IMG/VR virus record: IMGVR_UViG_3300042326_002445
Location: 1 to 64,000 of that record
Length of the DNA: 64,000 nt
Reading direction: 5' to 3' (one strand)
The position numbers were made by a program, and so were the translations under genes. This document shows positions 35,293-52,800 of the stretch, piece by piece. A model generated the notes under the pieces. That model was not told where the DNA came from. It saw only the letters and a program-made list of their open reading frames with translations, and did not search any database. Each line of letters begins with the position of its first letter. The stretch's first letter is position 1.

Positions 35293-38200
35293 ATGTCTAT
35301 AAAAGGTATTTCTACATATTCAGTCTATTTTCAGTTTAATGAGGTTGGAGGGATGCCTACCCCTGGCTCTGTTGTTAAATATATAGACCAAAACAGCGTA
35401 GAACATCATTTCGTCATTACTTTCTATTCTGCCGGTATTAAGTCGATTGGAATTAAGCCTGTTTCTGGTTTTGGCAAAGTTTTTCCAGGCCTTATTCCTA
35501 GTTCTTATTTATATGCGTTAGATGAAAGTTTTTATATTAAAATTGCTAATAATTCTGTAAAGCTTAATGATGGTTCAATAATTCATAAACTTTATTCTGT
35601 AACTGATGTTCAAAATTCATCATTAGTCACTCGTCATAGCTTAATTAACAGTGATTCTAGAGGTGTGACGTGGAATGAATCTTTTATGGATGGGTCTTTA
35701 TATTCTTATTCAGAATGTAATTTGGATTTTTTAAGTTTTACACTTCCATATGAAGAAGAATTTATTAGTGGCATATCAAAAAACAAACCAAATCCTGTAA
35801 TAGCTATTAATAGCAAGTTTGGTTTAGTGCTACATAAAGACGTTGCACACTATAGATCTCATCCTGTATTGTTTTTAGATAAAAGCTTAAATAGTATAGT
35901 GAAAATAAATACTATTGATTTTATCAATATGGGAGATTTTGCTAAAAATAATTTACGCGAAAACTACACTGAAGCGCTTGACGAGTACTCTATATGTGTT
36001 TTTGCAGATAACGATTATTTAAATGCACAAACAAATTTTGTTAATTTTGCAAATAATATTAATTCTTTTGAATCATCATATAATTTTCATGATTTGCTAG
36101 TAATTAATAGTTCTTTACATGCTGGTCTTATTAGATTGAATGTTTCTCCAGGATATACTGGATTTGGAGAAATGAAGAATTACAATTCAATACAAAAAGT
36201 TCTGTCTGAAGGGTGTTTTGATGGAGATTATGTTAATGAGTTTTCTCCTATAGATGACGAGTCTATGGTTTTTTTAAAATATGACAACAAAACATATTGT
36301 GTAGGCCATGTCAATTACAGAGACACAACGTATTTTTCTGGATGCAATTTTATTAATGGCAGATATGTTGCAGATGGAAGAAATTCATTTGGAGAATTTT
36401 CTAAATCTTTGATAGACAGCGGCAACTATTGCACCATTAATAAAATAAAACTGTTTTTTGATAGATCTTTTATTAATGTTATTAACGCTATTACTAATCT
36501 TTATGAACATATGACAGTGTCATATGAGGAAATAGGCATCATTAATAAAGTGATTGATGGAAATGTTGTCAACAGAAATTATCAAAACTATGATCCAATA
36601 CAATGTTTTCATCAATATGTTATTGGAGATAGTATATGTTCGTATATAGACGGCAAATATCGTTTTGATGATGGTTGTGAAAATTATGTTCCAGGTAGTG
36701 CTTATCTTCCAAGAGACGTAAGGCCAATAACAAAAAATGTTAATACAAAAGGTTTGGCAGAAAAAAGTGTTGGCATGCATTTTAGTCCACAATATGCATA
36801 TATGCAAGGTCAATACAAGTCGCTTGCGATTCCAATGTTCGGTGAAGCTGACTTATTTATGCCATTTAAAAATACTATAAAAGATCTTTATGTAGATCAT
36901 AATTTTGTATTTGTAGAAAAATGCGACTTAGGTCTTGCTATAAAAGATCGAATATCTAAAAAACAATTAAAAAATTTGTATATTTCAGGAATATCATGTG
37001 TAGAAAATGATCAGGTATTATCTGGATCAGATGGTGTGTTAAAATATTTAAGAAAAGATGGGAGTATTAGCAATGTAATAAGACATGACGATGCGGCAAT
37101 TTTATTGTGTCTTTCTTTACAATTTTTGTCTTTTTTAAACGAAGGTGAATATTCTGAAAAGATGTCGCTTATGTCTAATGTTATTTTTGACTTTGGACAA
37201 GATGGTAGAAGTAAATCTGTTAAACTTTCTTTTGTTCTTAATTCAATAAATAAAAGTATCTATCAATATAGCGATTATAATGATACATATTATGTATCTA
37301 AATTGGATAGAGACATAGCAATTCATGAGATGCAGAGAATGGTTAAAAGTTTAAGAGGTTTTTATGGCGGTCCATCTAGTGCTGTTTATCAAGATCTTAT
37401 AGGATTGATAAATGATTACGGATTGAAATATCCATCATCTACCATAAATGTATTAAAAGAAAAAATTATAGACACTGCTCATCTATTGACAAAGCTTAAT
37501 TTTTATATCAAAGGTCTTGGAGAACCTCAAGTTGATGTATTTGGCATGGCAGAAGACGCTACTGGAATTGTGGACTTAGAAAGCATATCTAGTCTTTCAT
37601 TAAATGATAAAGGACTAAGAAAGTATAAATCAAATAATGTTAGCAAATCAATTTCTTTATATTCATCTTATAAATCCATGGCTTATGGACAAACTTCACC
37701 TATTTGGTCTGGAATTGAAATTTTTTCTGGTTCTATTAGAAGCCCTTATCCTCCAAATGATGGCAAAAATGCCGCACCTATTGATGTGCGCAATACAGTT
37801 GAGGTGATGATTAATAGGTGGCTTGATTCTGTATCGCAACTATCTGAGCATTTTGACGGATATATTGTCGAATCAAAAGACCATATTAGTATAGTTGATG
37901 ATAATGAAATGCGTTCAAGAAATTATGTGCTTATAGAGTCTCTGAAGAACAAAACGAATGTGCTACTAAATAGTAATTTTAAGATTGGCATTTCGTTCTC
38001 TTGCATAAGTGATGTAGATTTTCCAACTAGAACAACTGGCTATCTCAATAGTGGCTATATCATAAATGCTTCAAGAATATTCGCAAATATAATAAAGCCA
38101 TCTTTAGACGCTGGAGCAAGAATAGTAGTTCAAGATCAAAATATAGACATGTATATATTAAGCTACTTTAACTTTATTGATGCAGCAATTATCGGTAATC

Positions 38201-39030
38201 GCAGTAAAGAAGCTGAAAATGCTTTGTGTTTTTTTGAAAATGTTTATAATCCTGATTATCCCAATAAGTCTTTTTTATTAGATTTAGACGGCAATGAGTC
38301 TGCCGTATTTGATGGTATAAAATTTAACACAATCGAGCAAAACGCTTTTATTAATTATCTGAATTATCAAGGTTCTTACTATTTTTCATCTTATAGTGCG
38401 TTTAAAAGCGCATACTCTCCAGCTGGTGCAGAACTTTCAGACAGCAATATAGATTTAGAAAGATTTTGTGAAAGAAAATCAGTTTTGTATGTGGCTCAAA
38501 ATTTGATTGCTGAGCAAATATCTACTGTTGTATCTAGCATAAATGACTATGAAATAACTCAGAATACTCAAAAATCTTTACTGATGTACGGATATAGATC
38601 TGCTGCTGTTCAGGCTCCAAAAAGAATTACTCATAATATATTTGCTCATAATTTCTTTAACTTTGTTATGGTAAAAATGGGTGAAGAAGTACAAAACACT
38701 CATTTTACAAGAAATTTATTTTCTTCTCCATACGCAGGTTTAAAAACAAATCAAATTCATGCATTTACTCATGACGACAATTTTGTATTAAAGAAGATTT
38801 TTCATAGGAGTAGTAACATTAAAGATTCTTATATTGAAAGTTGCATTGTAGGAGATTGGGGTAAGTTAAAAAATGTTTATCCAATTCCTCCAAATGAATT
38901 TGTCACGTCTGATGGAATAAATATGACTAAGGGAGAAGGCTCTAATAATCGTGATGACGATATAATATTTAGATTAAGCACATCGAATTTGCCAAATATC
39001 AAGAATTATTCTATTAATGGAATTATATAA
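35293..39030 (+). CDS. Large hypothetical protein (1245 aa)
   Basis: 3.7 kb uninterrupted ORF within the operon; no confident motif. Confidence 0.7.
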   Translation: MSIKGISTYSVYFQFNEVGGMPTPGSVVKYIDQNSVEHHFVITFYSAGIKSIGIKPVSGFGKVFPGLIPSSYLYALDESFYIKIANNSVKLNDGSIIHKLYSVTDVQNSSLVTRHSLINSDSRGVTWNESFMDGSLYSYSECNLDFLSFTLPYEEEFISGISKNKPNPVIAINSKFGLVLHKDVAHYRSHPVLFLDKSLNSIVKINTIDFINMGDFAKNNLRENYTEALDEYSICVFADNDYLNAQTNFVNFANNINSFESSYNFHDLLVINSSLHAGLIRLNVSPGYTGFGEMKNYNSIQKVLSEGCFDGDYVNEFSPIDDESMVFLKYDNKTYCVGHVNYRDTTYFSGCNFINGRYVADGRNSFGEFSKSLIDSGNYCTINKIKLFFDRSFINVINAITNLYEHMTVSYEEIGIINKVIDGNVVNRNYQNYDPIQCFHQYVIGDSICSYIDGKYRFDDGCENYVPGSAYLPRDVRPITKNVNTKGLAEKSVGMHFSPQYAYMQGQYKSLAIPMFGEADLFMPFKNTIKDLYVDHNFVFVEKCDLGLAIKDRISKKQLKNLYISGISCVENDQVLSGSDGVLKYLRKDGSISNVIRHDDAAILLCLSLQFLSFLNEGEYSEKMSLMSNVIFDFGQDGRSKSVKLSFVLNSINKSIYQYSDYNDTYYVSKLDRDIAIHEMQRMVKSLRGFYGGPSSAVYQDLIGLINDYGLKYPSSTINVLKEKIIDTAHLLTKLNFYIKGLGEPQVDVFGMAEDATGIVDLESISSLSLNDKGLRKYKSNNVSKSISLYSSYKSMAYGQTSPIWSGIEIFSGSIRSPYPPNDGKNAAPIDVRNTVEVMINRWLDSVSQLSEHFDGYIVESKDHISIVDDNEMRSRNYVLIESLKNKTNVLLNSNFKIGISFSCISDVDFPTRTTGYLNSGYIINASRIFANIIKPSLDAGARIVVQDQNIDMYILSYFNFIDAAIIGNRSKEAENALCFFENVYNPDYPNKSFLLDLDGNESAVFDGIKFNTIEQNAFINYLNYQGSYYFSSYSAFKSAYSPAGAELSDSNIDLERFCERKSVLYVAQNLIAEQISTVVSSINDYEITQNTQKSLLMYGYRSAAVQAPKRITHNIFAHNFFNFVMVKMGEEVQNTHFTRNLFSSPYAGLKTNQIHAFTHDDNFVLKKIFHRSSNIKDSYIESCIVGDWGKLKNVYPIPPNEFVTSDGINMTKGEGSNNRDDDIIFRLSTSNLPNIKNYSINGII

Positions 39031-42000
39031 TGGCTCAATACATAAACACATCTTTAATATCTGATAGCGAATTTTGGGATGCATCTACTTGGAGAAAGAT
39101 GTGCAGAGAACTTGCTGGCCTTCGTGGATTGGCTCCAGCTATTCATTTTAGAAATACGGCTAACGATTCAGATGCGTCTCAGTCAGCGCCAGATGACCGT
39201 ATTTTTCATACCCACACGCACCAGAAAATATATGTTTGGGGTGTTGAAATGTGCGCAGGTGGATATGATACCTTAAAAATATATTGGAGAAGTCCTAGTA
39301 ATCCGCCAGATACTCAATGGAACTTAGATAGTGGATGGACTTTAATTAAAGGTGCTGGTGCTGCAAGTAACTCTGGAGAAGGGTATGGTCCTGGTCAGAC
39401 AAATCCAAGCAACGTAACTAATATACAGCCGGGTCCAAGTCCTGCTGGAAACAGGGGTGTGTCAGAGTCTACTCTTGGAGGGACTGGCACGGGGCTTCAT
39501 TTCCCTCAAAGTAACCCGTTGCCGGATGGATCAACGACCCTTACAACTTATTTTTATAATCAATGGCTGCTGGAGATGAAACATAGTGGAGCTATTTATA
39601 CTATGGCAGGTCCATCTCCAGCCTATGATAGCGGAAAGGCTTACACTACTTTAACATCCAATTTTTTAAGAACTTTTCTTTTGATGAAAGAAGGGTATTG
39701 GAAATTTGTATTAGATGAAACTGCATCGCCTTGGTATAATGCAAATCTTAATAAGCCGTCTACAAATTGGGATGGAGGACTTGATAACGATTGGTTCTAC
39801 AATAAGGGCAGAATGAGTCCGGTAGATTATTCTCAAAATCCAACTTTACACGAGTCTTTGCCAGGACATGTGGACAGTAGTAAAAATTTACAAGTATCTT
39901 CAACCGGAGTAAGGTATAGATCCAGATTTACTCGCTCTCTTAATGTAAGAGCTTTTTTCCCAGAAAAAGATTTAGTTACTGGCGTTCGCTTTACTCGTGT
40001 GACAAAAACTATGACTCCTGGCGTATTGACCACTGACACTCAAGTTGACGCGCCCTACACAAAGGTTGTTGGCTATGGAGGAGAGTGGGGTAGTTCTTTA
40101 AATGTAGACAGAAGTACAGAGTGGTCTAGATTTATAAAAACTAGGAATTCTTCTGGACAAGACGGGACAACAGGCTTCCCTCATATTTCAGAAATAACTG
40201 CTAATGAAAGATTTAGTAATACCGCATGGAGATTTACTCCTAACTTTAAAAAACGAACTATTAATAGAAGACATTTAATTTTAGACGGTGTCACCATTAA
40301 CGGTGGTGATAAATTCACTTCAGGTTATTACGGAAGTCAGATTTCAATGTATGAAACTGATCCGATATGGGTAAGGCAGGGGGCTCCCAGCTCTCCTGGT
40401 AGTTTGTTTCCATCTGGAGATGGGCAAGTAAAAGGATGGTTTATAGATTTTCGTGGCTGTGTTTTTAAAAATTGTACTTTTAAAAATGTTGGCATAGGAG
40501 GCTTCAATGAAACTTGTTTTTCTGGTGCATCTTTTTTAAATTGCAAGTTTATTAATTGTGCAATTAATACCAATGGTGATTCTATTCTTTTTAGCGAATG
40601 TTCTTTTATAGGTGGATGCAAGCAGGGGCCAATATTTACTCCACCAAATTTTCATTCAAGTGCTTTTATTAGTTGCCAATTTTTAAATAATGATAGATTT
40701 TTTATATTTACTTCGTCAAGAGGTCCTGTTAGTGACAATTTATGGTGGAGAAATGAATTTGATAATTATGTAAATATGAACGGCGGAGGTTCAGAACTGC
40801 TATGTACTGAATTCCCTGGTTTTATGAGATCTGGTGCTCATCAGTACGCATTTGAGACTTCTGGTACTGGAGGAAATACGGATTATATTCAGCAGCAGCA
40901 TGAATACGCTAGAAATATGTTTATATTCAATAGATTTCACAGCGGCTTAGGTGGAATAGTGTCTTCTTACGAAACTTTTAGTCGTGCAAATTTTTTCTAC
41001 TCTAATACATTTAATGATCCCATAAAGATATACGGGCATACTCCATCTTATCATGCAGAAGATAAATGTCTTTACGAATCTTGGGCTCACAATTTTATTC
41101 ATAAGTTATCAATTGCTTTAGATGGAAAATCTCATCATTTTAGATTTATATGTAATGCAATATCAGAGCCACATTTTAATTCATCTAAGTCCATAGATAA
41201 TCATTGGACAAGGTATCCATTTGGGAATAATGCATGGATCGTCGCTCAGGGTGTTGAGGCAGACGCCTCTGCTCCTACGGGTGAATGGTATTGTGTTAAC
41301 ACAACGGGAATGGGCAATAAAATAATAGGAAATCAAATAACTAATTGGGGCGATTATTTTATGAACAATGCATTAGGTCCATGTTCTATCTTTAATGGCT
41401 TTCATCATGTGTATGATCCAGATTTTGATATTAACATAAGTGGTGATTCATATTGGGGTCAAAATAATCGATGGAAATATGTTAATGTGGCTACTAGAAA
41501 TAGGTTTTTTATGCCTAGTCCATTTAAAAATTATGGATGGCATGATGGTGAGATAGGAAGAAAAAATGCTGATGGCACGTCTTGGAACCCGAGTAGACAT
41601 AATAATACTGGATCTAGGCTCTGGTCTCCTATGCCATTAGAATGGCAAATAAAAGGAGACGCCGGGGTTCATGGCGAAAGTGCAGGCGGACCACCTAATG
41701 GCTTCCAATGTTCTCAAACTGCGTCCGATATTTCTGCAAGAAATGAATGCAGATCTATATATGTGAAAAATGTAAGCACTGGTGTTTGGGAAAAGAAAAA
41801 TACTGGAGTTTTGTACAGTAATGAAGCAAATCTTAATGATAGAACCGGATGGAGTCAGCAAATATTTAAAAGTGATTTGATCACAAATGGACTTGTACTT
41901 TTTTTAGATGCTAGTCGTAGTCAGTCAATTGCTTATGGGAGTGGTGCTTCTTTTGACATTCCAGATGGAACTCTTTGGAAAAATATTGTATCTAACGGGT

Positions 42001-42716
42001 TTCATGGTACAGTAAAAAATGTTCCAAGATTTGCGGGGATTAACGGAGCATCTCCTCATGCCTCTTGTTCTAATACTTATTTAAGTGGATCTTTGGCCGG
42101 TCAGACTATAAATGATGGAAGTGGTGGCAGCATAAAATTTAATTGCACTGACACTAATGATTCTGTCATTGTCTCTAATATAAACTCATCTGGCGTGAGT
42201 GTTGCAAATACTTTCAGTGCTAGCACTACTAATTTTATTACCCTGCAAATATGGGCAAGGTTCAGGACACTTCCCAATCAAGGCATTTTGGGAAAAGGAA
42301 CAAACGCCCTTGCCACCGGATGGGATGGATATTCTATTCAAACTGATGGGGCAAGCAAGTTGCTTATAGTGACAAATGGAGGGTCTGCTTATACAACTCA
42401 TAGCTCTATAGCTACTGCGTCTTCTCTATCTTTAGATAAATGGTATTTAATAACTGCTGTCATAAAAATTGGGTCTTCTTCTGGGGATGTGCAGGGTTAC
42501 GTCAATAATAACAGGGTCATTAATTCTTCTCATGGCGCAGAGTCATCTTATGATGACACTGCAAATCCATTAACAATTGCTCAAGGGTATAGAAACAGCA
42601 CATCAGCTTTTTCTTTTAACGGATGGATTGGAGAGTTTTATTTTTACAATAGAGCTTTGACTGCTAATGAAATATCAAATAATTATACAGCCACAAAAGG
42701 CAGATTTGTTTATTAA
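39030..42716 (+). CDS. Tailspike-like beta-helix protein with C-terminal LamG domain (1228 aa), paralog 1
   Basis: Pentapeptide/beta-helix pattern IDFRGCVFKNCTFKN...SFLNCKFINC. C-terminal LITNGLVLFLDAS...FNGWIGEFYFYNRALTANEISNNYTATKGRF is the LamG type common in phages. Confidence 0.7.
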   Translation: MAQYINTSLISDSEFWDASTWRKMCRELAGLRGLAPAIHFRNTANDSDASQSAPDDRIFHTHTHQKIYVWGVEMCAGGYDTLKIYWRSPSNPPDTQWNLDSGWTLIKGAGAASNSGEGYGPGQTNPSNVTNIQPGPSPAGNRGVSESTLGGTGTGLHFPQSNPLPDGSTTLTTYFYNQWLLEMKHSGAIYTMAGPSPAYDSGKAYTTLTSNFLRTFLLMKEGYWKFVLDETASPWYNANLNKPSTNWDGGLDNDWFYNKGRMSPVDYSQNPTLHESLPGHVDSSKNLQVSSTGVRYRSRFTRSLNVRAFFPEKDLVTGVRFTRVTKTMTPGVLTTDTQVDAPYTKVVGYGGEWGSSLNVDRSTEWSRFIKTRNSSGQDGTTGFPHISEITANERFSNTAWRFTPNFKKRTINRRHLILDGVTINGGDKFTSGYYGSQISMYETDPIWVRQGAPSSPGSLFPSGDGQVKGWFIDFRGCVFKNCTFKNVGIGGFNETCFSGASFLNCKFINCAINTNGDSILFSECSFIGGCKQGPIFTPPNFHSSAFISCQFLNNDRFFIFTSSRGPVSDNLWWRNEFDNYVNMNGGGSELLCTEFPGFMRSGAHQYAFETSGTGGNTDYIQQQHEYARNMFIFNRFHSGLGGIVSSYETFSRANFFYSNTFNDPIKIYGHTPSYHAEDKCLYESWAHNFIHKLSIALDGKSHHFRFICNAISEPHFNSSKSIDNHWTRYPFGNNAWIVAQGVEADASAPTGEWYCVNTTGMGNKIIGNQITNWGDYFMNNALGPCSIFNGFHHVYDPDFDINISGDSYWGQNNRWKYVNVATRNRFFMPSPFKNYGWHDGEIGRKNADGTSWNPSRHNNTGSRLWSPMPLEWQIKGDAGVHGESAGGPPNGFQCSQTASDISARNECRSIYVKNVSTGVWEKKNTGVLYSNEANLNDRTGWSQQIFKSDLITNGLVLFLDASRSQSIAYGSGASFDIPDGTLWKNIVSNGFHGTVKNVPRFAGINGASPHASCSNTYLSGSLAGQTINDGSGGSIKFNCTDTNDSVIVSNINSSGVSVANTFSASTTNFITLQIWARFRTLPNQGILGKGTNALATGWDGYSIQTDGASKLLIVTNGGSAYTTHSSIATASSLSLDKWYLITAVIKIGSSSGDVQGYVNNNRVINSSHGAESSYDDTANPLTIAQGYRNSTSAFSFNGWIGEFYFYNRALTANEISNNYTATKGRFVY

Positions 42717-42727
42717 AAAGGAAAACT

Positions 42728-45079
42728 ATGTTTCAAGCTTACGATTCTAATTCTGCTTTAAGAGAAATGGTTGGCATAAGAGGAGCTGCACCTTCTATAA
42801 GATTTAATGAATCAGTTCCTGGAGTTTCTTCCTCAAAGGAAGTATTACATGTACCTGCGAATGAAAGCGTGTACGTTTGGGGGGTAGAGCTTTTTAGCGC
42901 AGGGCATGATTGCATAAAGATAACGCATTACCCAGAAAATAGTCCTCCATTTTTAATAAAAGATGGCGGATCTCATATATCAAATTTTAAAAATCAAAAA
43001 ACAATAACTTATGTCAAAAATGAAATAAGCATAAAAGAAGAAGTTCCATTTGATGATTTTTGGCAAGAGCCTTATCTAGTTAATAAAAATGATGAGCAAA
43101 TTATTAAAAGTAATTTTTTTAGATGTTTTATTTTTTTGGAAGAAGGCTACTACAAAATAGAGATTGATGAGTCTTTTAATCCAAAATACATGGATCCAAA
43201 TTTTTTGCCAATTGATTATAGCTCCGATGAAATTTATAGTCCTGGTAGCGGGGATAGGAGTGTAAGAAGAGCTGCAACATGGCAGGTAAAGAAATCTAAA
43301 AGCAATACTGTAAATGAGTCATATGCAAGATCTAATAGTTTTTTGAAAAGAGAAATTTATGTTAGAGCAATTTCTCGTACTAAAGACATAGTTGACGGAA
43401 GTTCATTTACTAGAAATGTGTTTAATCTTTCGCCTGGCATGGTGAAGTATGAAAATCTGCCACCATTTACTCCTTCTACAAATCTAGACACAAACGGCAA
43501 TCCAGTTCGTCTTGATTTAGTTGGTCCGTGGCATTTACTTGGAAATAATTCATATTACAATATAGATACATACCATAACAGTAATACAACTACAAGTGGC
43601 GCGCCTACTATTGACACTACACATGGATGGCAGGGAAGACATGCAGTTATAGCCCCACGTTATACTATGTCTTCTTTTATGAACCAATTTTTAGAAAACA
43701 CTTATAGGCCATATTCAGACTACTTCAGGCAAGGATGCCGTTATGTTAATATGCGTAACGGTATAATGGAAAATATCAATTTTTATGGATCAGACTATAC
43801 GATTGTTCATCAATTTATGATTGTTCCGTCTAGCTATTACAATGACTATCTTACAGTATCTGCAAGTGAAGCTAGTCAATATCTTTCAACTACATCGTAT
43901 GTTGTTACTATAAATAACATTGATAATGTTGTTACTATAGATAGCATTGATAATGTTGTTGCCTATTTAAATAATGGAACTTCAACACCTTCGTCATCTA
44001 CAAATCCTTTGAGCGTTCCAGACCAGTATAATAATAATGTCTTGTTGGATATGAGAGGCTGTGTCTTTAAAAATTGCACGTTTGATAAGTATAATATTGG
44101 CTGGTCTTTTAGAAAAGACACTATGCTTGATGGCGCCGTATTTGAAAATTGCACTTTTATAGGAGCTGGTTTAGGCTATTTGCATTACGGTGGAGTGTTA
44201 ATAAAAAATTGTCATTTTGAAGAAATAAGTTCAAATTCAGATTTAAGCTTATCTTGGGACGCTGGAGGTTCATGTTGTGTAATGGGTTGTACCCAAAAAT
44301 ATACTGAACGTGGTACACTTTTTTCATTCCATAAGGGTGGTTTTAATGACAGTGTTTGGATAAGAAATTCACTTCATGGCATTGATAGATTCCAAATTGC
44401 AAATGAGCACTGGGTGTGCGAGTCATGTTGCTGTGGAGATTGTGAAATTTCAAATAGATTTGACAATAACATGTACATCATGAACAGGGCGTCTAAGGGG
44501 CCTGCTTCAATCGGTCCATATAGAACTAACTCTAAACTTAACTTAATGGCATTTAATTCTTTTGAGTCACCTTCTGGTGGTGCTGGTATGATCATAGTCA
44601 ATGATCCTGGTAGGGCATTTGACATGGAGTGTAATGTTTGGCTGTACAATGATATATTAGGTGGATATGTGGATTTTCAAAATTGGTGTAAAAACAATAG
44701 GTTGATCAATTGTACTTTTAGAAAAGCACAAAATACTGGAAATCCATGGGGAGGGTATAATTGGGTTGCGCAAGATGAGCAAAGTGGGTGCTGCATGTAT
44801 AGTTCTTACAAATTTTTAAATATTAGCGGCACTACAACTAATGCTCCACAAAGCAATTTGCTTATTAATTGCTCTATGATTGATTATCAAGACGATAGTT
44901 ACACTTTTGGTGCCAGTTATGCTAGCGATAATAATTGGTTTTTTAGCAATAAAGATCCTAAAATTGACAATTCAGAATTATTAGCAGGTAAAAATGTAAT
45001 TTATAATTTAAGAAGAATTATAGAAAATAGTATGAGCAGAAAATATCCATTTGGAGAAAGCGTTCCTGGGCCATCTTAA
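42728..45079 (+). CDS. Tailspike-like beta-helix protein (783 aa), paralog 2
   Basis: Shares N-terminal motifs with 39030 and 45083; LDMRGCVFKNCTF...AVFENCTF; AAGGA Shine-Dalgarno-like sequence upstream. Confidence 0.7.
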   Translation: MFQAYDSNSALREMVGIRGAAPSIRFNESVPGVSSSKEVLHVPANESVYVWGVELFSAGHDCIKITHYPENSPPFLIKDGGSHISNFKNQKTITYVKNEISIKEEVPFDDFWQEPYLVNKNDEQIIKSNFFRCFIFLEEGYYKIEIDESFNPKYMDPNFLPIDYSSDEIYSPGSGDRSVRRAATWQVKKSKSNTVNESYARSNSFLKREIYVRAISRTKDIVDGSSFTRNVFNLSPGMVKYENLPPFTPSTNLDTNGNPVRLDLVGPWHLLGNNSYYNIDTYHNSNTTTSGAPTIDTTHGWQGRHAVIAPRYTMSSFMNQFLENTYRPYSDYFRQGCRYVNMRNGIMENINFYGSDYTIVHQFMIVPSSYYNDYLTVSASEASQYLSTTSYVVTINNIDNVVTIDSIDNVVAYLNNGTSTPSSSTNPLSVPDQYNNNVLLDMRGCVFKNCTFDKYNIGWSFRKDTMLDGAVFENCTFIGAGLGYLHYGGVLIKNCHFEEISSNSDLSLSWDAGGSCCVMGCTQKYTERGTLFSFHKGGFNDSVWIRNSLHGIDRFQIANEHWVCESCCCGDCEISNRFDNNMYIMNRASKGPASIGPYRTNSKLNLMAFNSFESPSGGAGMIIVNDPGRAFDMECNVWLYNDILGGYVDFQNWCKNNRLINCTFRKAQNTGNPWGGYNWVAQDEQSGCCMYSSYKFLNISGTTTNAPQSNLLINCSMIDYQDDSYTFGASYASDNNWFFSNKDPKIDNSELLAGKNVIYNLRRIIENSMSRKYPFGESVPGPS
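43899..43966 (+). repeat. 27-nt in-frame tandem repeat (about 2.5 copies)
   Basis: gttgttactataaataacattgataat / gttgttactatagatagcattgataat / gttgttgcctat encodes VVTINNIDN VVTIDSIDN VVAY. Confidence 0.85.
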
Positions 45080-45082
45080 AAT

Positions 45083-46789
45083 ATGGGGTACACCGATCAC
45101 AGTTTTCATTTAGGTTTACGCAAGCTTGCTGGCATGAGGTCAGTAGCGCCTGCTGTTCGCTATATTGATTCAGATTTAGGCGAAGAAGCTTTTTGCGTCA
45201 GAAAAGATGAGCTTATTACTTTATGGGGTTGCGAATTAATGCCCTTGCAGTCTGATTGTGTAAAAATTAGCTATAAATCAAGCCCATCAGCATCGTGGCA
45301 AGTTTTAAAAAACTATTTAGTTCAAACTTCTATAGCTATTTCTGGCGGGCACAATCCTACAGATGCATCTTATACGTTTTCTGGCTTTCCAAGTTTAGCT
45401 GATAACTACGAATTAAATGATCCTTTATACGCAAATGGATTTCAAATAAGTGGAATTACTTACTGTAGAGAGCATGACAGCCCATTTAAAACTGTTGGAT
45501 ATTCTTTATCTTGGATATATAGAGTGCAAGACGACACTCACGCAAAAGTTTCGTATACTAATTTTGGAAGAGGGTTTAGGTTTTACGTAGAGGGTTATTA
45601 CAAATTTGAGTACGATGAGTCTAGATCGGCTTTGTACAGACAGACAAGTTCAAATTTTCCTATAGTAAACCCGGATACTCAAGACTACAATACATTTAAA
45701 TATAATGGATCTGTACCTTGGACCCCTTCTGATTCTTCTTTATACGAACATGGAGACTCATTAGTAAGATCTATAATTATTAAGTGTAAAAGTAATTTTG
45801 ATGTAGTTTCTAATAGCACTTATGTTAATAACAATGTGTCTATATCTTCTTCTAATATTGAGAGTTTTGTAGCCTTAACTGCTGATAATATTTGTAAAAA
45901 AGTAGGTCTTAATATTAAGTCAAAGTCATATTTATTACCATCTGCTAATGGATCAGTTTTGGCTAGACAGTATTGTGCTTCTGATAATTTTTTAATAGAT
46001 GTATCTTCTACGGGTGTTGCATCAAGTGTTATTAATCAATTTGACAAAGCCATGGGGGTGCAATCAGGAGAAGTGGTTAAAAATCTTAGAAATAGAACTT
46101 TTGATACAGCTAATTTTTTAGGACCAGGAGATTTTGTTCAACATATTGCTTCAACTCCCGGTTCTTTAGACTGTGCTCAAAAAATAGATATGAGGAATTC
46201 TAGATTTTATAATTGTATTTTTAAAAATGTTATATTTGGATCTCCAGGAAATTCACAATTAATTTTAGATGGTTCGTTATTTTTTCAATGTTCATTTTTT
46301 AACTGTAAATTTTACTTGAATGGACAAAATATTGCTATTAAAAATTGTAATGTTAATAATAGTTCAGTTCGTGATGGTTTTTTAATATTCAATGGATCTT
46401 ATGGAAATATGATTTCTGATGTTATATTCAAAGATACAGATAAGCCATTTGTATTTGTTAATGGAGTTAATGCAAATCGTAATAATTTTATTATGATGAA
46501 TAATTGCAGTCAGGCTGGAGACGTAGAAATAGGTAGTTGTCCTTTTGTAAATGTTGTAGGAGATTCAAATAACAGCGGATCTTTTTCTGGAAATATTGTT
46601 ATGAGAAATTATATAGACGACGGATCTGGAGATCCAATAAGAATTGAAAAAACTTCGGCTCATGGTAATTTTTTTGGTGGTAATTATATGATTTCTCATG
46701 GAAATGTATCTCTGGCAGACGACGCAAGGCAGAAGCAAAAAAATAAGGATATTATCAAATATCCGAGTATTAAGCCGTATATTCCTTAA
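45083..46789 (+). CDS. Tailspike-like beta-helix protein (568 aa), paralog 3
   Basis: LRKLAGMRSVAPAVRY, LWGCEL, EGYYKFEYDES and IDMRNSRFYNCIFKN are shared with the two upstream paralogs. Confidence 0.7.
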   Translation: MGYTDHSFHLGLRKLAGMRSVAPAVRYIDSDLGEEAFCVRKDELITLWGCELMPLQSDCVKISYKSSPSASWQVLKNYLVQTSIAISGGHNPTDASYTFSGFPSLADNYELNDPLYANGFQISGITYCREHDSPFKTVGYSLSWIYRVQDDTHAKVSYTNFGRGFRFYVEGYYKFEYDESRSALYRQTSSNFPIVNPDTQDYNTFKYNGSVPWTPSDSSLYEHGDSLVRSIIIKCKSNFDVVSNSTYVNNNVSISSSNIESFVALTADNICKKVGLNIKSKSYLLPSANGSVLARQYCASDNFLIDVSSTGVASSVINQFDKAMGVQSGEVVKNLRNRTFDTANFLGPGDFVQHIASTPGSLDCAQKIDMRNSRFYNCIFKNVIFGSPGNSQLILDGSLFFQCSFFNCKFYLNGQNIAIKNCNVNNSSVRDGFLIFNGSYGNMISDVIFKDTDKPFVFVNGVNANRNNFIMMNNCSQAGDVEIGSCPFVNVVGDSNNSGSFSGNIVMRNYIDDGSGDPIRIEKTSAHGNFFGGNYMISHGNVSLADDARQKQKNKDIIKYPSIKPYIP

Positions 46790-46879: not shown

Positions 46880-49800
46880 ATGGCTTACATAATTAACTAT
46901 AAACCTAATTTACATGACCTGTACACCTATGGGTCTCAGCCGATTATAGATCCTAGTAATTGGCAAAATAATAGAAGAGTATATCCAACTGGTTATAATC
47001 AAAATTTATTTATTAAAGATCCATTTTATAATTTAAATTTTAATGTTGATTTTAGCGGAATGGATCGTGAAGGTAGGGGTGCTCCTGGTTACGGATTTAA
47101 TCAATACGAAGGTCAGTCTGGGTATCTACCATCCGGTGTTTTGGTAAATTCTGGCAGTGGATCTGTTACTCTGCCTAGCATAGCTGGCCAGTTTAGGTCG
47201 TTTGGCAACAATGCAGACTGCTACCATTTAGGCTGTCCTGTTGGTAATTTTGAAATAGCTTCTAATTATAATCATTGGAATAATGGAGCATGGGCAAAAG
47301 TCTTGATTAGCCCAAAACATTTTCTTGCAACAGCACACTATGTTGGTTCTGGCAACAACAACACTTCAATACGCTTGCTTGGAAAAAATAATCAAGTAGT
47401 TACTAGAAATGCAACAAAGCTTATAGACTTTAGTAATTCATCTAATTTTCCACCTGGATATAATTGGCCAAATTCATCTTTTGATTATACTTTATTTGAA
47501 TTAGACACTGCTCTTACAGAGCAGGAAATGCAACAAATTAAAGTTTATAAATTTTTAAATGCATTTAATTTGCCAACAAGTGTTCCACTTTTTTATGTTT
47601 CTCCTCAAAGCGTTGTATCTGTACTGAATTCTTTAGGAAATGATTATTTTAATATAAATTTGTATCCTGATGCTGCATATAGAGGCAGTTTAGTTTCCGG
47701 CGTTCCAACGCAATCTACATTTAGTGTTTGGGTTGGCGACAGCGGGACTCCAGTGTTTGCTTATGTTCCTGGTATTGATGAAACATGTTTTTTATACTCT
47801 GCTTGGGGTGGAATGACGATATCAGACAACGGCAATACTGCAAATCCAACGGCTACAAAAAAATGGTTTGATGCTTTAAAACAATATATTTTTGATAGAA
47901 TCGGGTACAATATTGGCTTAGTCAATTACTCTACTACCGGAGGCGGCAATTCGTCAAGCAGTAGCTCCATAGGTAGTTCAAGCAGTAGTTCAAGCAGTAG
48001 TTCAAGTAATGTTGACTCAGGTTTGTGGATGCCCATATCTTCTGATAATCCGTTTGCAAGGAATATCGATATGACTTCCGATACTGACTCTCCTCCTATA
48101 GCTCGTTGGTCCAGTGTTCCATTGCAGTGGATCCATGATGGTGAGTCGGTAAAGGCCTCCGTTGTCGCCTATCACTCTACAGGAATAAAGCGTGTAGATT
48201 TTATATGCGATGGAGGAGAGTACGAATCTGGAGCTCATATTATAGGTGTTATAAATCCGGTTGCTGACTCTAGTTCTAAGCAAGATGAGTATGCTTGCAG
48301 TATAGATATAAATGATTCTTGGTCCGAGGGAATACACACAATAAGAGCTATTGTTTATGCAAATAATGGGACAAAGAGAGTACTTCAAGGTTCTTGGTTG
48401 CCTAAATATAGTAGTATATCTGATCCTTATAATTATTTTAATAATGGAGAAGTCGATTTTACTTTTATTGTTAATCGTGGCTCTTATGATGGCAATACGG
48501 TATATGTAGATGCGGTTAATGGAGATGATTCGAATAATGGTTCTTTTAATAGCCCATTTAAAAATTTATGGAATGCGATTCCCGCAGCACACGCATTTCA
48601 TTTAGAAAATTCTATTAAAGAAGATGTGATTATATGCAAAGCTGGAGAGTACAGGCTAAGTCCATTGTTAAATGGTGATTATTCTTCTGGAACTCCATCT
48701 GCACTTGCTTTGGGTGCTGGAAGAATAGGTTGGTTAAAAATAAAAGCGCTGGATGGTTTAAGTAAAAAAGATGTCGTAATTACAAATCGTTCAACTAATT
48801 TTGGCAGTGTTGCCAATCCGACGAGCTATGCTGTAAAATCAAATACTTTAGTCTCTAGGTTTACTGTCTTTGAAAATATAACATTGGAAAATTTCTATGA
48901 CAGTAGTACAAATGTTTCGGGAGAAAAAGATTACATTATTTCTACTGACGGTTCTTATGGATTTGATTCTAGAGGTGTGTGGTTAAACAACTGCTCTATT
49001 AGAGGACGCTCAGGCGTCTCTGTTGATACTCTAGTATCTACTTTGAACAATCAAGTTAATATTTTTTTTAAAGCATATCCGGGTATTGCTCAAAATGTAG
49101 TTGGTTTTGCCACTAATTGCAATGTAAATAGTCTTTATAGAGGATTTGACGGTTTTGTAATGTTAAAGCAATGTGGAATTGGTAATACTGTAGAGTTTGC
49201 AATTAAAAATTGTGCTTCAATTTTCTCTTGCAATATATCTAATGTCGGCAATGTTGGTGCTGTCGCAGATTCAGCTGTCATTAATTTTAGCCATACTTCA
49301 TTGGCAAAAAGTAACATTATAGTTGCAAAGAATCAGATTAATAAATCTGCTATATCTCATTTTAGGATTAATCCACATCGTAACGTTTTTGATTCAGAAA
49401 TTTACTTTGAAGGTTTTGCAATTGTATCAAATTATTTTTCTAGAGCTACTGGAGGTCCAGGTAAATCATACATATATAATGGTATAAAGCAGATTTTCAT
49501 GTCACACAATAGTATGTTAGACTATTTGTCTATACATGATGCTAGTGGTGGAGTTTGGGGCGGTGATGTCTTAGTCTCAGACGTGTATTGTAAAAGTAAT
49601 CTGCTCAATGGGATTATTGTAGACTCTACTTCTGGTTCGTCTGCGTCCCTTGGAGCAGGCTCTGTCGCATTAAATCAGGGATTTTTAAATTCTAATTCAG
49701 AAATATCTTCCAATATATTTTTATTACCAACTCAGTCAAATAATCCGTTATTTTTATCATTAATTGTTAATGATAAAAATAAGCAAGTTAATCAAAGTGT

Positions 49801-52800
49801 TCATAAAATTGTAAAAAACTATAGTGAGGGTAATCTTTCGCTTTTATGTGTTAGTTTAAATGGAGTGTCTAATCCAGCTAAAGGAATAGAAACAGCTACA
49901 TTGTTAAATACTGATATTTTAGGAAACTCTTATGAAGGTTCAAAGTCCGACTGTGGCGCAAGACAGGATTGCACAGAAGAAGTTTCGCCAGATATTATAG
50001 AAGTTGCAGATTTTCAGACAGTTCCTATTTCTGGTTTTCCAGTTCTTGGATCTAATCAAGTAGAATTTTTTCAGTCTTCCACATTTGCTTTACAATATCA
50101 GTTTAGTGCGTTTGATATGGTTTTGTGGTATGATCAAAACGTAAGAAATTTTCCAGTATCTGCCTCAGAAGTCGGGTCTGAATATTATCCGGGCGGCTCA
50201 TATGAAACTTGCCAGATTTGCACGTTAGGTTCTGGACTTTGCACCAGCACTGTTGACGGTGGCATAAATTGGTTTAAGCGATGGAGCTTACCATCAAGTT
50301 TGACTTACGAACTTTCAACTTTGCCTGCATGTGGTAGCGGAAATACTTCAAAAATAGCTGGCACAAGAGCAGCATTTAAAGAATATTTTGATGTTGATGG
50401 AATGATCAGGGGAATGTCAAGATACAGTCCAGATTGGGCTTTAGTATTTTTACATGGCGGCTCTGAGCCTTTATGGTGGGACACTCAAATCCCAGGGATG
50501 CAGCAGTGGGCCTTGTTAGCAGATGATGGGGAAGAATCTACTTCCATGGGATTGGGATTAGACGTTGTTCAGGCATATAAGGACGCATCTAATAAGTATA
50601 AACAAAAATTAATGGCTTATTTTTTCCCATTTGCTTGGATTGAGCTTGATTCTTCTGTTTATCCATATGCTTTAGACATTTTTGGAAATCATGTTATTGA
50701 AGGTCGTCACGGACCTAATATTAGTTATAGATCTTGTTTCAATAGTGCATTTGTTGAATTACTTGCTAAAATACACGTTGAGATGGCTCAAAAATGCTAT
50801 GATCTAGAAACTGGATATGGGTTTAATGGTTGCATGTGGGATGCAGCTCCATTGTTTTATACACTAGATTTTAGTCCAGATGCAATATCCGCATCTGGTA
50901 TCGATTCAACTACAAACTTTCCATGGCCATTGAATAATCCAGCAGACGGCTCTGACACCACTGCTTTGACTGACTTTGTTAGTAGTGTAACTGCCAATGC
51001 CAACCCTGGAACTTTGCTACTAAGAGATCCCAATCCTTCTTTTGGATGGACTCAGGCAGTAAAAGATAAGCTTCAAGCTTATGTATATGCTTTAAATAAT
51101 AAACAGCCAGATATAGTCAGAACTATAAGAGAGGCAGTTGATCAGGCTGGCTACTCGGAATTTGCTATACTGCATGCAGTAGGAAACTCTCAGCCTTCTT
51201 TTGAATGGCCTGGGAATTCTGAAGACGTTGTTTTGTATGCGTCTGGAGTAAAAACTGAAATCGGTGCAGAAGGGTATGTTCGCAGAAGACAAGCACCTGG
51301 AGTTACGAATAAAACTGGCGCTAAATCAGTGCCAGATCTTTGGCTTGCGATGCATACCGACTTGCTCCTTTCTCAAGCTCGCACAGGCAAGAGGGCTTAT
51401 GGATGGCAGATTGGCCAGTGGTTTATACCAAACTGGATATCTGGGGGTACTTGCGATGATACCTTCAAGTCTTGTTTGACATCTTTTGATAGTGGGTATT
51501 CTGGTAAGGTAGAGTTTAAAAATAATGTTCTTCCAAGAGACATAGCTGTTCGTGGTTGGCTGGAAAATCAATCTCTTCTTGCTCTAGTTTCACATACAAC
51601 TCCAGAATTTATGTATGCGTTTTATGATTGGTACAAATATGACCAAATAGAAGATCTTTCTGGTTTTGAAAATAGTGCTGACGCATTTGCTATTCAACAC
51701 TTACCCTTCATGAGAAGAATCTCGTCCATATTAGGTTCAATAGGTGACGCAAATGTTAGGTTGTTTAATAGAACTAATGTTGCATGGTGCGTAATATTGC
51801 ACAGGCCAGAAGTAGGATGGGGAAGTTATGCTTTTATAAACACTGGGATAAATGAGTCTTATGCTAATTTCTCATATTATTGGCCTATTTTTGGCGCAGT
51901 ACAAACGTGTGTCGAGCACGGCATCCCATATGTAATCGCGCAAGATGATGCATTTACGGTTAATAATTTTACTAATTCTGGCGTTGTTATAGTACCATTT
52001 GATAAAAATTTATTACCCATTTCTGCAAGACAAGAATTAGACAGTTTTAATGGACATGTAATATACTTGCAAGATGAAATTGCAAATGGTCAAGTTGATG
52101 ACAATTTCCATAATACGGAATTAGTTGGGAATAAGACTAGAGGGCAAGTTGCAAGAGACCAGCTATGGACGTTAATTCAGCAAGGTTCAAGAAATATCGT
52201 ATTACAGACAGAATTTTCTTATCCAGATAGTTTGCCTGAAAAACCAGTTCCTATAGCAGGATATGAAATAGGATTAGACTCATATGGGAATGAATCATTG
52301 CTTGTTACGCTTATTGCAGATGCTGCATGGCATGATGCAAGAAAGTTTGGCTTCTTTGGGCTTACGACAAATAATTATCCTATTAATGGAACATGTGGTA
52401 GGCAAAATCTGCTACTAGCTTCTCCAAATGATCCAGAGAATGATCTGGTAAGTTCGTTGGGTTTAAGGAAGATTTTAGATGTTTGCAGTTGCACTTATTC
52501 TGATACTTTTACGACTATCAACACCCTTGCTGGAAGAGATTGTTATTATGTTGAGCACGCTGCTGCAGGAGCTATTCCAGTAGATGTATTACCAGCAAGA
52601 GGAAAGTTAAACTACTATGCAGGATATCCTCCAGTTTGGAACAGCAATAGAGGTGCTAGAATAACTTTCAATGCATCTCAGTCTCCTTATAGATTACGTC
52701 AATTACTACTTGATAAAGAAAGTGGAATATTTGGACCAGTTGATATGTTTGTTAATGGGGATATGATAGATGTTGTACCTTTTGAAATAGGTTCAGTTGT

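What the first reader, a model, noticed from the sequence alone, without database searches (positions are those of the whole stretch)
39030..46789. Three tandem paralogous tailspike-like genes with a shared, unrecognised N-terminal anchor
All three share R[EK][LM][AV]G.R..AP[AS][IV].[FY], [VL]WG[VC]E[ML].....D.[LIV]KI, [ST]NF.R.F....EGY[WY]K...DE[ST] and [IL]D[FM]R...F.NC.F, with large variable insertions between the blocks. Only the first ends in LamG. Inference: a branched receptor-binding set with a common attachment domain and divergent Cys/Asn-ladder beta-helices for different host glycans.
Basis: partly seen in the sequence, partly recalled or inferred. Interest (0 to 1): 0.6.

Follow-up and report, generated by a model that had tools for sequence, protein, structure and literature searches.

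The report
Fixed trio of phage beta-helix proteins
A large uncultured lake-water phage carries three neighbouring, anciently duplicated tailspike-like proteins that share a previously undescribed N-terminal domain; the same three-gene set recurs in unrelated freshwater phages, where it probably anchors variable host-binding parts.

Summary
ORFs 39030-42716 (A, 1228 aa), 42728-45079 (B, 783 aa) and 45083-46789 (C, 568 aa) are true paralogs (BLASTP 3e-28 to 4e-10). All four reader motifs occur exactly once in each protein and nowhere else in the 223.6-kb contig.

An AlphaFold2 model of C (pLDDT 79, pTM 0.86) has two parts:
- Residues ~1-245 form a beta-sandwich with only generic V-set Ig similarity (Z about 5).
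- Residues ~245-550 form a right-handed parallel beta-helix, with Z 17-18 to phage tailspikes and depolymerases.

No Pfam, PHROG or NCBIfam model covers the N-domain. A profile search of 1.84 billion proteins finds about 40 clusters carrying it, always at the protein's start.

- The trio is fixed. Nine loci, from jumbo-type and T4-like freshwater phages, each carry one A, one B and one C in the same order. This indicates an ancient triplication.
- The beta-helices are conserved among orthologs, not swapped.
- Variability sits in C-terminal add-ons. These are LamG on A and, on C, long fibre segments that in two relatives are fused in frame to the homolog of the window's 5596-aa neighbour.

A homotrimer test gave no verdict. 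I read the trio as a conserved assembly scaffold for distal binding modules. Virion location and stoichiometry are inferred, not shown.

The parts
35293..39030 (+). Upstream gene U (1245 aa), first gene of the conserved four-gene block U-A-B-C. Its last ~125 residues (about nt 38605-38967) are the only part shared with the U proteins of the T4-like phages.
   Evidence: It always lies immediately upstream of A in all loci examined. The C-terminal 1105-1225 matches L002 U 1124-1245 (E about 4e-6; alignment A5). No Pfam, PHROG, NCBIfam or PDB match.
39030..42716 (+). Paralog A (P0001, 1228 aa): N-domain ~1-330 (nt 39030-40019), beta-helix core from ~470 to ~830 (nt ~40437-41519), an unassigned region 830-1050, and a LamG/ConA-like lectin domain 1053-1216 (nt 42186-42677).
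   Evidence: The A clade has SH-aLRT 96. LamG and the last ~300 aa are present only in close relatives (P0019-21); other A orthologs are ~900-1030 aa.
42728..45079 (+). Paralog B (P0002, 783 aa): N-domain ~1-240 (nt 42728-43447), a middle region, and a beta-helix core from ~440 to ~720 (nt ~44045-44887).
   Evidence: The B clade has SH-aLRT 98. A weak sub-threshold pentapeptide-repeat hit at 443-480 (19.3 bits against a cut-off of 27) reflects the repetitive helix coils.
45083..46789 (+). Paralog C (P0003, 568 aa): N-domain 1-~245 (nt 45083-45817), a V-set-like beta-sandwich with insertions, then a right-handed parallel beta-helix ~246-546 (nt 45818-46720).
   Evidence: AF2 models; fold searches. 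The C clade has SH-aLRT 100. Orthologs range from 529 to 3146 aa.
46880..63670 (+). Giant ORF (5596 aa), functionally linked to C. Its homologs are fused in frame to the C ortholog in two related phages, and a segment (residues ~2800-3350) forms the C-terminal extension of C orthologs in T4-like phages.
   Evidence: L016_C 1-556 matches C and 559-1217 matches giant 380-1044 (E=5e-111). L015_C 10-540 matches C and 564-1951 matches giant 1050-2470 (45% identity). L001/L003/L004/P0036/P0046 C orthologs carry a match to giant ~2800-3350 (E 1e-41 to 1e-58). Pfam gives SASA esterase-like (2514-2766, E=7e-5, just under threshold) and a dockerin-like repeat.

Best explanation
A, B and C are three anciently triplicated paralogs of a phage-specific appendage protein family. 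Each consists of a family-specific N-terminal V-set-like beta-sandwich (about 240-330 aa) followed by a right-handed parallel beta-helix of the tailspike/depolymerase type. Together with the upstream gene U they form a conserved four-gene cassette, U-A-B-C, found in two very different freshwater phage backbones: a >220-kb phage rich in giant ORFs, and T4-like myoviruses. In the T4-like phages the cassette sits among the neck, tail-completion, terminase and sheath genes. I infer the following. All three are virion proteins. The N-domain is the assembly and attachment element, with each paralog holding its own non-interchangeable position. The N-domain plus beta-helix core is a conserved scaffold, possibly also glycan-binding or glycan-cleaving. 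Host specificity is mainly supplied by exchangeable C-terminal payloads: the LamG lectin on A, and on C the multi-thousand-residue fibre that is either fused to it or, as in this window, encoded by the next gene. Shown here: paralogy, the fold, the fixed 1:1:1 trio, restriction to phages, and the C-giant fusion. Inferred: virion location, the attachment role of the N-domain, the oligomeric state, and the ligand.
For: Paralogy and motifs. Fold: the AF2 model of C has pLDDT 79.3 and pTM 0.86. Residues ~245-568 match solved tailspikes/depolymerases and PL6/GH28 enzymes at Z 15-18, rmsd 3-4 A, over 230-265 aligned residues. The N-domain model has pLDDT 83.6 and finds only generic Ig V-set matches, Z<=5.2 with ~98-110 of 250 residues aligned. 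Family size and architecture: a profile search of 1.84e9 representatives gives 37 proteins at E<=1e-30 and 46 at E<=1e-10. The N-domain match starts within the first 10 residues of every full-length member. Weaker hits match only the helix-repeat region. Fixed trio: nine loci each carry U-A-B-C in order. The tree shows three clades (SH-aLRT 96, 98, 100), each with one member per locus and the same internal sub-lineages. At 50% identity there are about 9 A, 10 B and 9 C clusters. Structural-gene context: in L002 and the P0028 contig the cassette lies between T4 gp13/gp14/gp15 homologs and TerS/TerL/sheath/portal. Conservation pattern: the first 100 residues are the most conserved, the core is conserved through the helix, and the C-terminal add-ons are lineage-specific. 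Rosetta-stone link of C to the giant fibre. No relative of the N-domain in 50,697 deposited phage records (tblastn). One pattern-based scan of 185,579 prokaryote species found only a weak helix-repeat hit. The DNA recurs in at least 24 lake-water metagenome runs.
Against: There is no direct evidence that the proteins are in the virion. The phage is uncultured, the 223.6-kb record is about 55% complete, and it shows no terminase, sheath or portal. The homotrimer prediction for the helix gave no verdict, so the oligomeric state is unknown. The residues conserved in the helix are mostly structural ladders (C, F, N, G), so neither enzymatic nor binding activity of the helix is established. The attachment partner of the N-domain is unidentified. 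The idea that U's conserved C-terminus is that partner rests only on co-conservation and adjacency. AF2 used a shallow alignment (38 rows).
Confidence: 0.55

Rival explanations
1. One reading: three independent homotrimeric tailspikes dock through one common anchor domain to the same adaptor, forming a branched set. Each recognises or degrades a different host glycan through its own divergent beta-helix.
For: The beta-helix fold is closest to solved tailspikes and depolymerases. The genes are in tandem and share an N-domain. The N-terminus is the most conserved part. Multi-tailspike phages with conserved N-termini are well documented (PMC8432352, PMC8825819).
Against: The trio is invariant in number, order and orthology across deeply diverged phages. 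Helices are conserved among orthologs rather than swapped, whereas Ackermannviridae exchange beta-helix modules (PMC8432352). The paralogous N-domains are only ~25-35% identical and each has many clade-specific invariant residues, which argues for three distinct docking sites rather than one common site. The variable parts are the C-terminal add-ons. Trimerisation is not shown (no verdict).
Confidence: 0.22
2. A, B and C assemble 1:1:1 into one hetero-oligomer, a pseudo-trimer formed through their homologous N-domains and first helix coils. This gives a single asymmetric appendage that carries three different distal payloads.
For: Strict 1:1:1 co-occurrence and near-equal cluster counts per clade. 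Tight spacing of the genes, with U overlapping A. Clade-specific conserved residues in each N-domain.
Against: The homologous cores differ in length (about 830, 720 and 547 residues), because of insertions and different numbers of helix coils. This fits poorly with a side-by-side helix bundle. I know of no solved heterotrimeric tailspike (own knowledge).
Confidence: 0.13
3. The proteins are not virion components. They would be soluble polysaccharide-active enzymes released at lysis, or intracellular beta-helix proteins of the pentapeptide-repeat or HalA kind acting on host nucleic-acid machinery or defence.
For: Weak sub-threshold hits to pentapeptide repeats and HalA. Beta-helices also occur in free enzymes. 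Glycosyltransferase genes lie nearby on the contig.
Against: The pentapeptide hits are below the Pfam cut-off and cover only 35-60 residues of repetitive coil. The 50 VIA-align matches listed are pectate-lyase-type helices, tailspikes and related beta-helix proteins, with no pentapeptide-repeat protein among them. The cassette is embedded among neck, terminase and sheath genes in T4-like phages. C is fused to multi-thousand-residue fibre-like proteins.
Confidence: 0.07

Closest known systems
Branched tailspike complex of Ackermannviridae (CBA120 TSP1-4) and other multi-tailspike phages such as G7C, SP6 and K1-5 (PMC8825819, PMC8432352, PMC11414711)
   Same: Several tandem genes encode beta-helix tailspike-type proteins. 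Their N-terminal parts are conserved and serve assembly, while other parts determine specificity. The set is conserved across a phage group.
   Different: The N-terminal domain here is not the T4 gp10-like XD/TD type: no such match appeared among the top structural hits, and the Pfam T4_gp9_10_N search, whose controls also found nothing, gave no hit in the contig. The three proteins here are paralogs over N-domain plus helix, with strict 1:1 orthology. The helices are conserved rather than swapped. Variability lies in C-terminal add-ons, including giant fibres. The cassette is shared between unrelated phage backbones.
Canonical homotrimeric tailspikes and depolymerases (e.g. APK09 gp48 8oq0, Det7 gp208 6f7k, HK620 TSP, phi29 gp12)
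   Same: A right-handed parallel beta-helix of similar size (Z 15-18, rmsd 3-4 A), preceded by an N-terminal beta-rich particle-binding domain.
   Different: There is no sequence-family membership: no Pfam Beta_helix or Pectate_lyase_3 hit. Trimer formation is undecided. No conserved acidic catalytic pair was identified. The N-domain has no match to known head-binding or anchor domains.
T4 gp10-gp11-gp12 baseplate periphery (PMC3004832; the proposal that the three arose by triplication is recalled from my own knowledge of Leiman et al. 2006 and was not checked here)
   Same: Three adjacent genes in a T4-type structural region are proposed to descend from one ancestor. They build a fixed-stoichiometry attachment network for fibres.
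   Different: No sequence or fold similarity was detected. The position in the T4-like genomes differs, lying between gp15 and gp16 rather than before wac and gp13. The proteins here are beta-helix proteins.
Pentapeptide-repeat proteins (MfpA, Qnr, HalA)
   Same: Repetitive beta-helical coils with a hydrophobic or Cys/Phe ladder, and weak HMM hits.
   Different: The hits are below the family threshold. The 50 VIA-align matches listed are pectate-lyase-type helices, tailspikes and related beta-helix proteins, with no pentapeptide-repeat protein among them. Size, domain architecture and genomic context are all different.

Membership tests
Phage tailspike / pectate-lyase-like right-handed parallel beta-helix proteins | Right-handed parallel beta-helix fold | tested here: met
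   In the AF2 model of C, residues ~245-568 match 8oq0, 7chu, 6f7k, 9qrm, 6e1r and others at Z 17-18.3, rmsd 3.0-3.9 A, over 229-254 aligned residues. A and B are homologous through this region.
Phage tailspike / pectate-lyase-like right-handed parallel beta-helix proteins | Homotrimeric assembly | tested here: inconclusive
   Complex prediction with three copies of C 240-568 gave no verdict. This is neither support nor evidence against.
Phage tailspike / pectate-lyase-like right-handed parallel beta-helix proteins | Sequence-family membership (Pfam Beta_helix PF13229, Pectate_lyase_3 PF12708 and similar) | tested here: not met
   No such Pfam hit at E<=0.1 for A, B or C, and no PHROG.
Phage tailspike / pectate-lyase-like right-handed parallel beta-helix proteins | Conserved catalytic acidic residues in a substrate groove (for depolymerase-type spikes) | tested here: inconclusive
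   Residues conserved at >=90% in the helices are mostly C, F, N and G ladders. A has a few conserved charged residues (D569, E625, R628, R652, H703, R705, K764), but their placement was not mapped.
Phage tailspike / pectate-lyase-like right-handed parallel beta-helix proteins | Presence in the virion and attachment to the tail | not testable with these tools
   Context only: the cassette lies between gp13/14/15 and TerS/TerL/sheath in T4-like relatives.
Ackermannviridae-type branched TSP set (T4 gp10-like XD/TD N-terminal domains) | gp10-like XD or TD domains at the N-terminus | tested here: not met
   The best structural matches of the N-domain are generic Ig V-set domains (Z<=5.2), with no gp10, gp9 or TSP N-terminal domain among the top 50. 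PF07880 gave no match in G000 or G001, but the tool's controls did not match either, so that search alone is weak.
Ackermannviridae-type branched TSP set (T4 gp10-like XD/TD N-terminal domains) | Receptor-binding beta-helix modules exchanged between spikes and phages | tested here: not met
   Orthologs are conserved through the helix, and the three clades are clean with one member per locus.
Pentapeptide-repeat family (PF00805 / PF13576 / PF13599) | Score above the Pfam gathering threshold | tested here: not met
   B scores 19.3 bits against a cut-off of 27 (PF13576) and 12.7 against 20.2 (PF00805). A and C have no hit.
Laminin G / ConA-like lectin domain (C-terminus of A only) | Pfam PF13385 above the gathering threshold | tested here: met
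   A residues 1053-1216, E=2.5e-12, 47.6 bits against a cut-off of 27.6. The domain also matches phrog_4390 and a hypothetical protein of Synechococcus phage S-SKS1.

The most novel reading that the evidence does not exclude
The three paralogs are obligate partners that form one asymmetric 1:1:1 hetero-complex, a pseudo-trimeric tailspike scaffold. Each arm carries a different payload: a lectin, nothing or a short tail, and a giant fibre of up to several thousand residues. The whole U-A-B-C cassette moves horizontally as a unit between unrelated phage backbones. This would be a heteromeric alternative to the homotrimer rule for beta-helix spikes.
Probability: 0.13. Interest if true: 0.7.

Novelty: new variant of a known kind. 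Interest (0 to 1): 0.45.

Why it matters
Phage receptor-binding sets are usually described as interchangeable homotrimeric spikes on gp10-like adaptors, a picture drawn mostly from enterobacterial phages. This family comes from uncultured freshwater phages. It has an undescribed anchor domain, a copy number frozen at three since before the divergence of very different phage lineages, and variable distal modules that include giant fibres. If the N-domain is an assembly element, it offers three things:
- a marker for finding host-recognition modules in uncultured aquatic jumbo and T4-like phages
- an explanation of how multi-thousand-residue fibre proteins are attached
- a new docking module for engineering

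It also documents a structural cassette shared between unrelated phage backbones.

Tried and rejected
- **Homotrimer prediction.** Complex prediction on C 240-568 with three copies scored 0.00 against a mark of 0.42. The verdict was 'no answer', so it is evidence neither way.
- **Sequence-family scans.** Pfam, PHROGs and NCBIfam found nothing for the N-domain or the helix. The weak TafC hit lies in the LamG part. The HalA and pentapeptide hits are sub-threshold matches to repetitive coil.
- **PDB by sequence.** A profile search with A3 returned only pentapeptide and HalA hits at E 0.006-0.05.
- **Deposited phage genomes.** tblastn found nothing for C, and only the LamG domain of A matched, to S-SKS1.
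- **ESM Atlas.** The feature search gave no usable hit in either call. The Atlas's own model is poor (pLDDT 0.40), so its structural neighbours were not used.
- **Fourth paralog.** The first 400 aa of the giant ORF (nt 46880-48079) are not a hidden fourth N-domain paralog (hhalign probability 0.2%).
- **Protease motifs.** The same region shows HY..GSG and GDSGTP strings that look like a trypsin-type protease. Pfam and PDB searches do not support this, so it stays a motif-level impression only.
- **U's C-terminal domain.** No PDB or Pfam match. An S74-type intramolecular chaperone was considered but has no support.
- **Virion markers in the 223.6-kb record.** Terminase, sheath, portal and Baseplate_J were not found. 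The record is about 55% complete, so absence means little.
- **Promoter and terminator scan.** No signal above shuffled expectation.
- **Scan with alignment A4.** It was repeated with A1.
- **'Moraphage' lineage.** Membership (PMC12619734) was considered but could not be tested, so I make no claim.
Full report
**What is there.** The window is the first 64 kb of a 223,646-bp linear IMG/VR virus record (GC 0.35, CheckV completeness about 55%).
- A: 39030-42716, 1228 aa
- B: 42728-45079, 783 aa
- C: 45083-46789, 568 aa

The upstream gene overlaps A at 39030, the A-B gap is 11 nt and the B-C gap is 3 nt. The three proteins are significantly similar to one another: A-B E=3e-28, A-C 4e-10 and 1e-8, B-C 1e-10 and 3e-7. 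No other ORF in the window is related to them. Each occurs once in each protein and exactly three times in the six-frame translation of the whole contig. Only A carries a Laminin_G_3 domain (residues 1053-1216, E=2.5e-12).

**Fold.** I built a 38-row alignment from the three proteins and their metagenomic relatives (A3). With it, AlphaFold2 gives a confident model of C (mean pLDDT 79.3, pTM 0.86).
- Residues ~245-550 form a right-handed parallel beta-helix. An exhaustive structural comparison with 48,161 PDB representatives gives Z 15-18.3 (rmsd 3-4 A, 229-265 residues aligned). The matches are solved phage tailspikes and depolymerases (8oq0, 7chu, 6f7k, 9qrm, 6e1r, 5w5p, CBA120 TSPs) and PL6/GH28-type enzymes. 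Foldseek alone was weak.
- The N-terminal ~245 residues were modelled separately (pLDDT 83.6). They form a beta-sandwich whose only matches are generic V-set immunoglobulin domains: Z<=5.2, with about 98-110 of 250 residues aligned. ESM Atlas matches have TM<=0.36.
- The sandwich core is built from the conserved sequence blocks, and the variable insertions lie between them.
- No known tailspike anchor appears among these matches, neither a T4 gp10-like XD/TD domain nor a P22-type head-binding domain.

**How widespread.**
- Pfam, PHROGs and NCBIfam have no model for the N-domain or the helix.
- tblastn against 50,697 deposited phage genomes finds nothing except the LamG domain.
- A profile search of 1.84 billion representative proteins finds 37 proteins at E<=1e-30 and 46 at E<=1e-10. 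In every full-length member the N-domain starts at the first residues. Weaker hits match only the repetitive helix coils.
- A pattern-based scan of one genome from each of 185,579 prokaryote species found no N-domain relative.
- The window's DNA is present in at least 24 lake-water metagenome runs, so it is a real, recurrent freshwater phage.
- The rest of the contig encodes phage replication proteins: a split family-B-like DNA polymerase, helicases, a UvsX-like recombinase and an exonuclease.

**The trio is fixed and old.** I examined nine loci: the window, four IMG/VR loci (L001-L004), four assembly loci (L005, L013, L015, L016), plus the gene map of the P0028 contig. Each carries the same order: an upstream ~1240 to 2130-aa gene (U), then one A, one B and one C. 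Reciprocal BLAST shows 1:1 orthology over nearly the whole core: A 1-832, B 2-722, C 3-547, at 27-38% identity. A maximum-likelihood tree of the N-terminal 340 residues was built with the quick method, because the careful search did not finish. It resolves three clades (SH-aLRT 96, 98, 100), each with one member per locus and the same internal sub-lineages. At 50% identity the library holds about 9 A, 10 B and 9 C clusters. The triplication therefore predates the divergence of these phages, and none of the three has been lost or re-duplicated in any locus seen.

**Two different phage backbones.**
- In L002 and the P0028 contig, the cassette lies between homologs of T4 gp13, gp14 and gp15 (neck and tail completion) and TerS, TerL, tail sheath and portal. 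That places it inside the late structural region of T4-like myoviruses.
- In the window and in L005, L013, L015 and L016, it lies inside a long run of giant ORFs. No other flanking gene is recognisably shared with the T4-like loci.
- The one exception is the last ~125 residues of U, which are conserved between the two backbones (E about 4e-6).

So U-A-B-C behaves as a cassette that has moved between backbones. U's C-terminus is a candidate partner of the N-domains, but this is an inference from adjacency and co-conservation only.

**Where the variation is.** Block-wise identity shows the first ~100 residues are the most conserved, and the rest of the core, helix included, is conserved in all orthologs. 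The parts that differ are C-terminal.
- A's last ~300 residues, including LamG, exist only in the window's near kin. Other A orthologs are ~900-1030 aa.
- C orthologs range from 529 to 3146 aa.
- In L016 the C ortholog continues in frame into a homolog of residues 380-1044 of the window's neighbouring 5596-aa ORF (E=5e-111).
- In L015 it continues into a homolog of residues 1050-2470 (45% identity).
- In the T4-like phages it carries a homolog of residues ~2800-3350, or RCC1-type repeats.

This fusion/fission pattern links C functionally to the giant ORF 46880-63670. It shows that the N-domain plus helix sits at the proximal end of long fibre-like proteins.

**Most likely mechanism.** The steps below are inferred unless a call is cited. 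A, B and C are virion appendage proteins. Their N-domains mediate assembly, each at its own site. This is suggested by the ~25-35% identity between paralogous N-domains and by the many clade-specific invariant residues. The conserved beta-helix core acts as a rigid scaffold and possibly as a glycan-binding or glycan-cleaving unit. The exchangeable C-terminal modules (the LamG lectin and the giant fibre) provide most of the host specificity. I give this about 0.55.

It fits the fold and the tandem arrangement. It does not fit the frozen copy number or the conserved helices, which contrast with Ackermannviridae, where helix modules are swapped (PMC8432352). A 1:1:1 hetero-complex gets about 0.13, and a non-virion role about 0.07.

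**What could not be decided.** The single complex-prediction job, a homotrimer of C 240-568, returned no verdict and counts neither way. The heteromer and the U/N-domain pair were not tested. Virion location, oligomeric state, ligand and any enzymatic activity remain open. The contig lacks recognisable terminase, sheath and portal genes, but it is incomplete.

**Comparison and novelty.** In function, the closest known systems are the multi-tailspike, branched receptor-binding complexes of Ackermannviridae and similar phages (PMC8825819, PMC8432352, PMC11414711). The present set shares with them the tandem beta-helix proteins and the conserved N-termini. It fails the membership features that were tested:
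- It has no gp10-like XD/TD domains.
- It shows no helix swapping.
- It has no Pfam membership.

It is best filed as a new variant of a known kind: a tailspike-type family with an undescribed anchor domain, a fixed ancient trio and payload variation at the C-terminus. Interest is moderate (0.45). The fold and general role are ordinary. The frozen triplication, the cassette shared between unrelated backbones and the link to giant fibres are not.

Noticed in passing
window 371-63670 (and on to ~84.9 kb of the contig): Nearly the whole window is one co-directional run of very large ORFs: 3286, 501, 1776, 356, 2808, 1849, 212, 541, 303, 1245, 1228, 783, 568 and 5596 aa, followed outside the window by 2587, 497 and 3965 aa. 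Annotation is sparse: RCC1 repeats (ORF 371-10231), dockerin/EF-hand repeats (11740-17070), a weak BNR hit (18139-26565), and a lambda J-like segment (26565-32114). A second block of 1936, 3947 and 2671 aa lies at 127-153 kb. About half of the 223.6-kb record is giant ORFs.
   Followed up: partly
window 46880-48020: The 5596-aa ORF has an extra N-terminal ~355-residue domain followed by a poly-serine linker (residues ~358-377). Close relatives lack this: the L013 and L005 giants start at the equivalent of residue ~381. The domain contains trypsin-like strings (HY..GSG and GDSGTP), but Pfam and PDB searches give no support.
   Followed up: partly
window 54419-55177 (giant ORF residues 2514-2766): A SASA-type (sialic-acid-specific acetylesterase) carbohydrate esterase-like segment, E=6.9e-5, just under the Pfam cut-off. 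It lies immediately before the ~2800-3350 segment that is the commonest C-terminal extension of C orthologs.
   Followed up: no
window 10364-10447: ARAGORN calls a tRNA-Val (CAC) inside the 501-aa ORF 10231-11736. It is probably a false positive or an embedded element.
   Followed up: no
window 38605-38967 (U residues ~1105-1225); L002 9336-9992: The C-terminal ~125 residues of the gene upstream of A are the only flanking sequence shared between the jumbo-type and T4-like loci. They have no known family or structure.
   Followed up: partly
G000 97192-100489 (L006 13192-16486), outside the window: The DNA polymerase (phrog_405) is split into two adjacent ORFs of 450 and 650 aa that overlap by 8 nt. 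This could be a split gene or a frameshift.
   Followed up: no
L015 10001-19441; L016 12037-19791: In two related ~250-kb-class phage contigs the C ortholog is a single 3146-aa or 2585-aa protein, fused to homologs of the window's giant ORF. This is a gene fusion/fission polymorphism within the lineage.
   Followed up: yes
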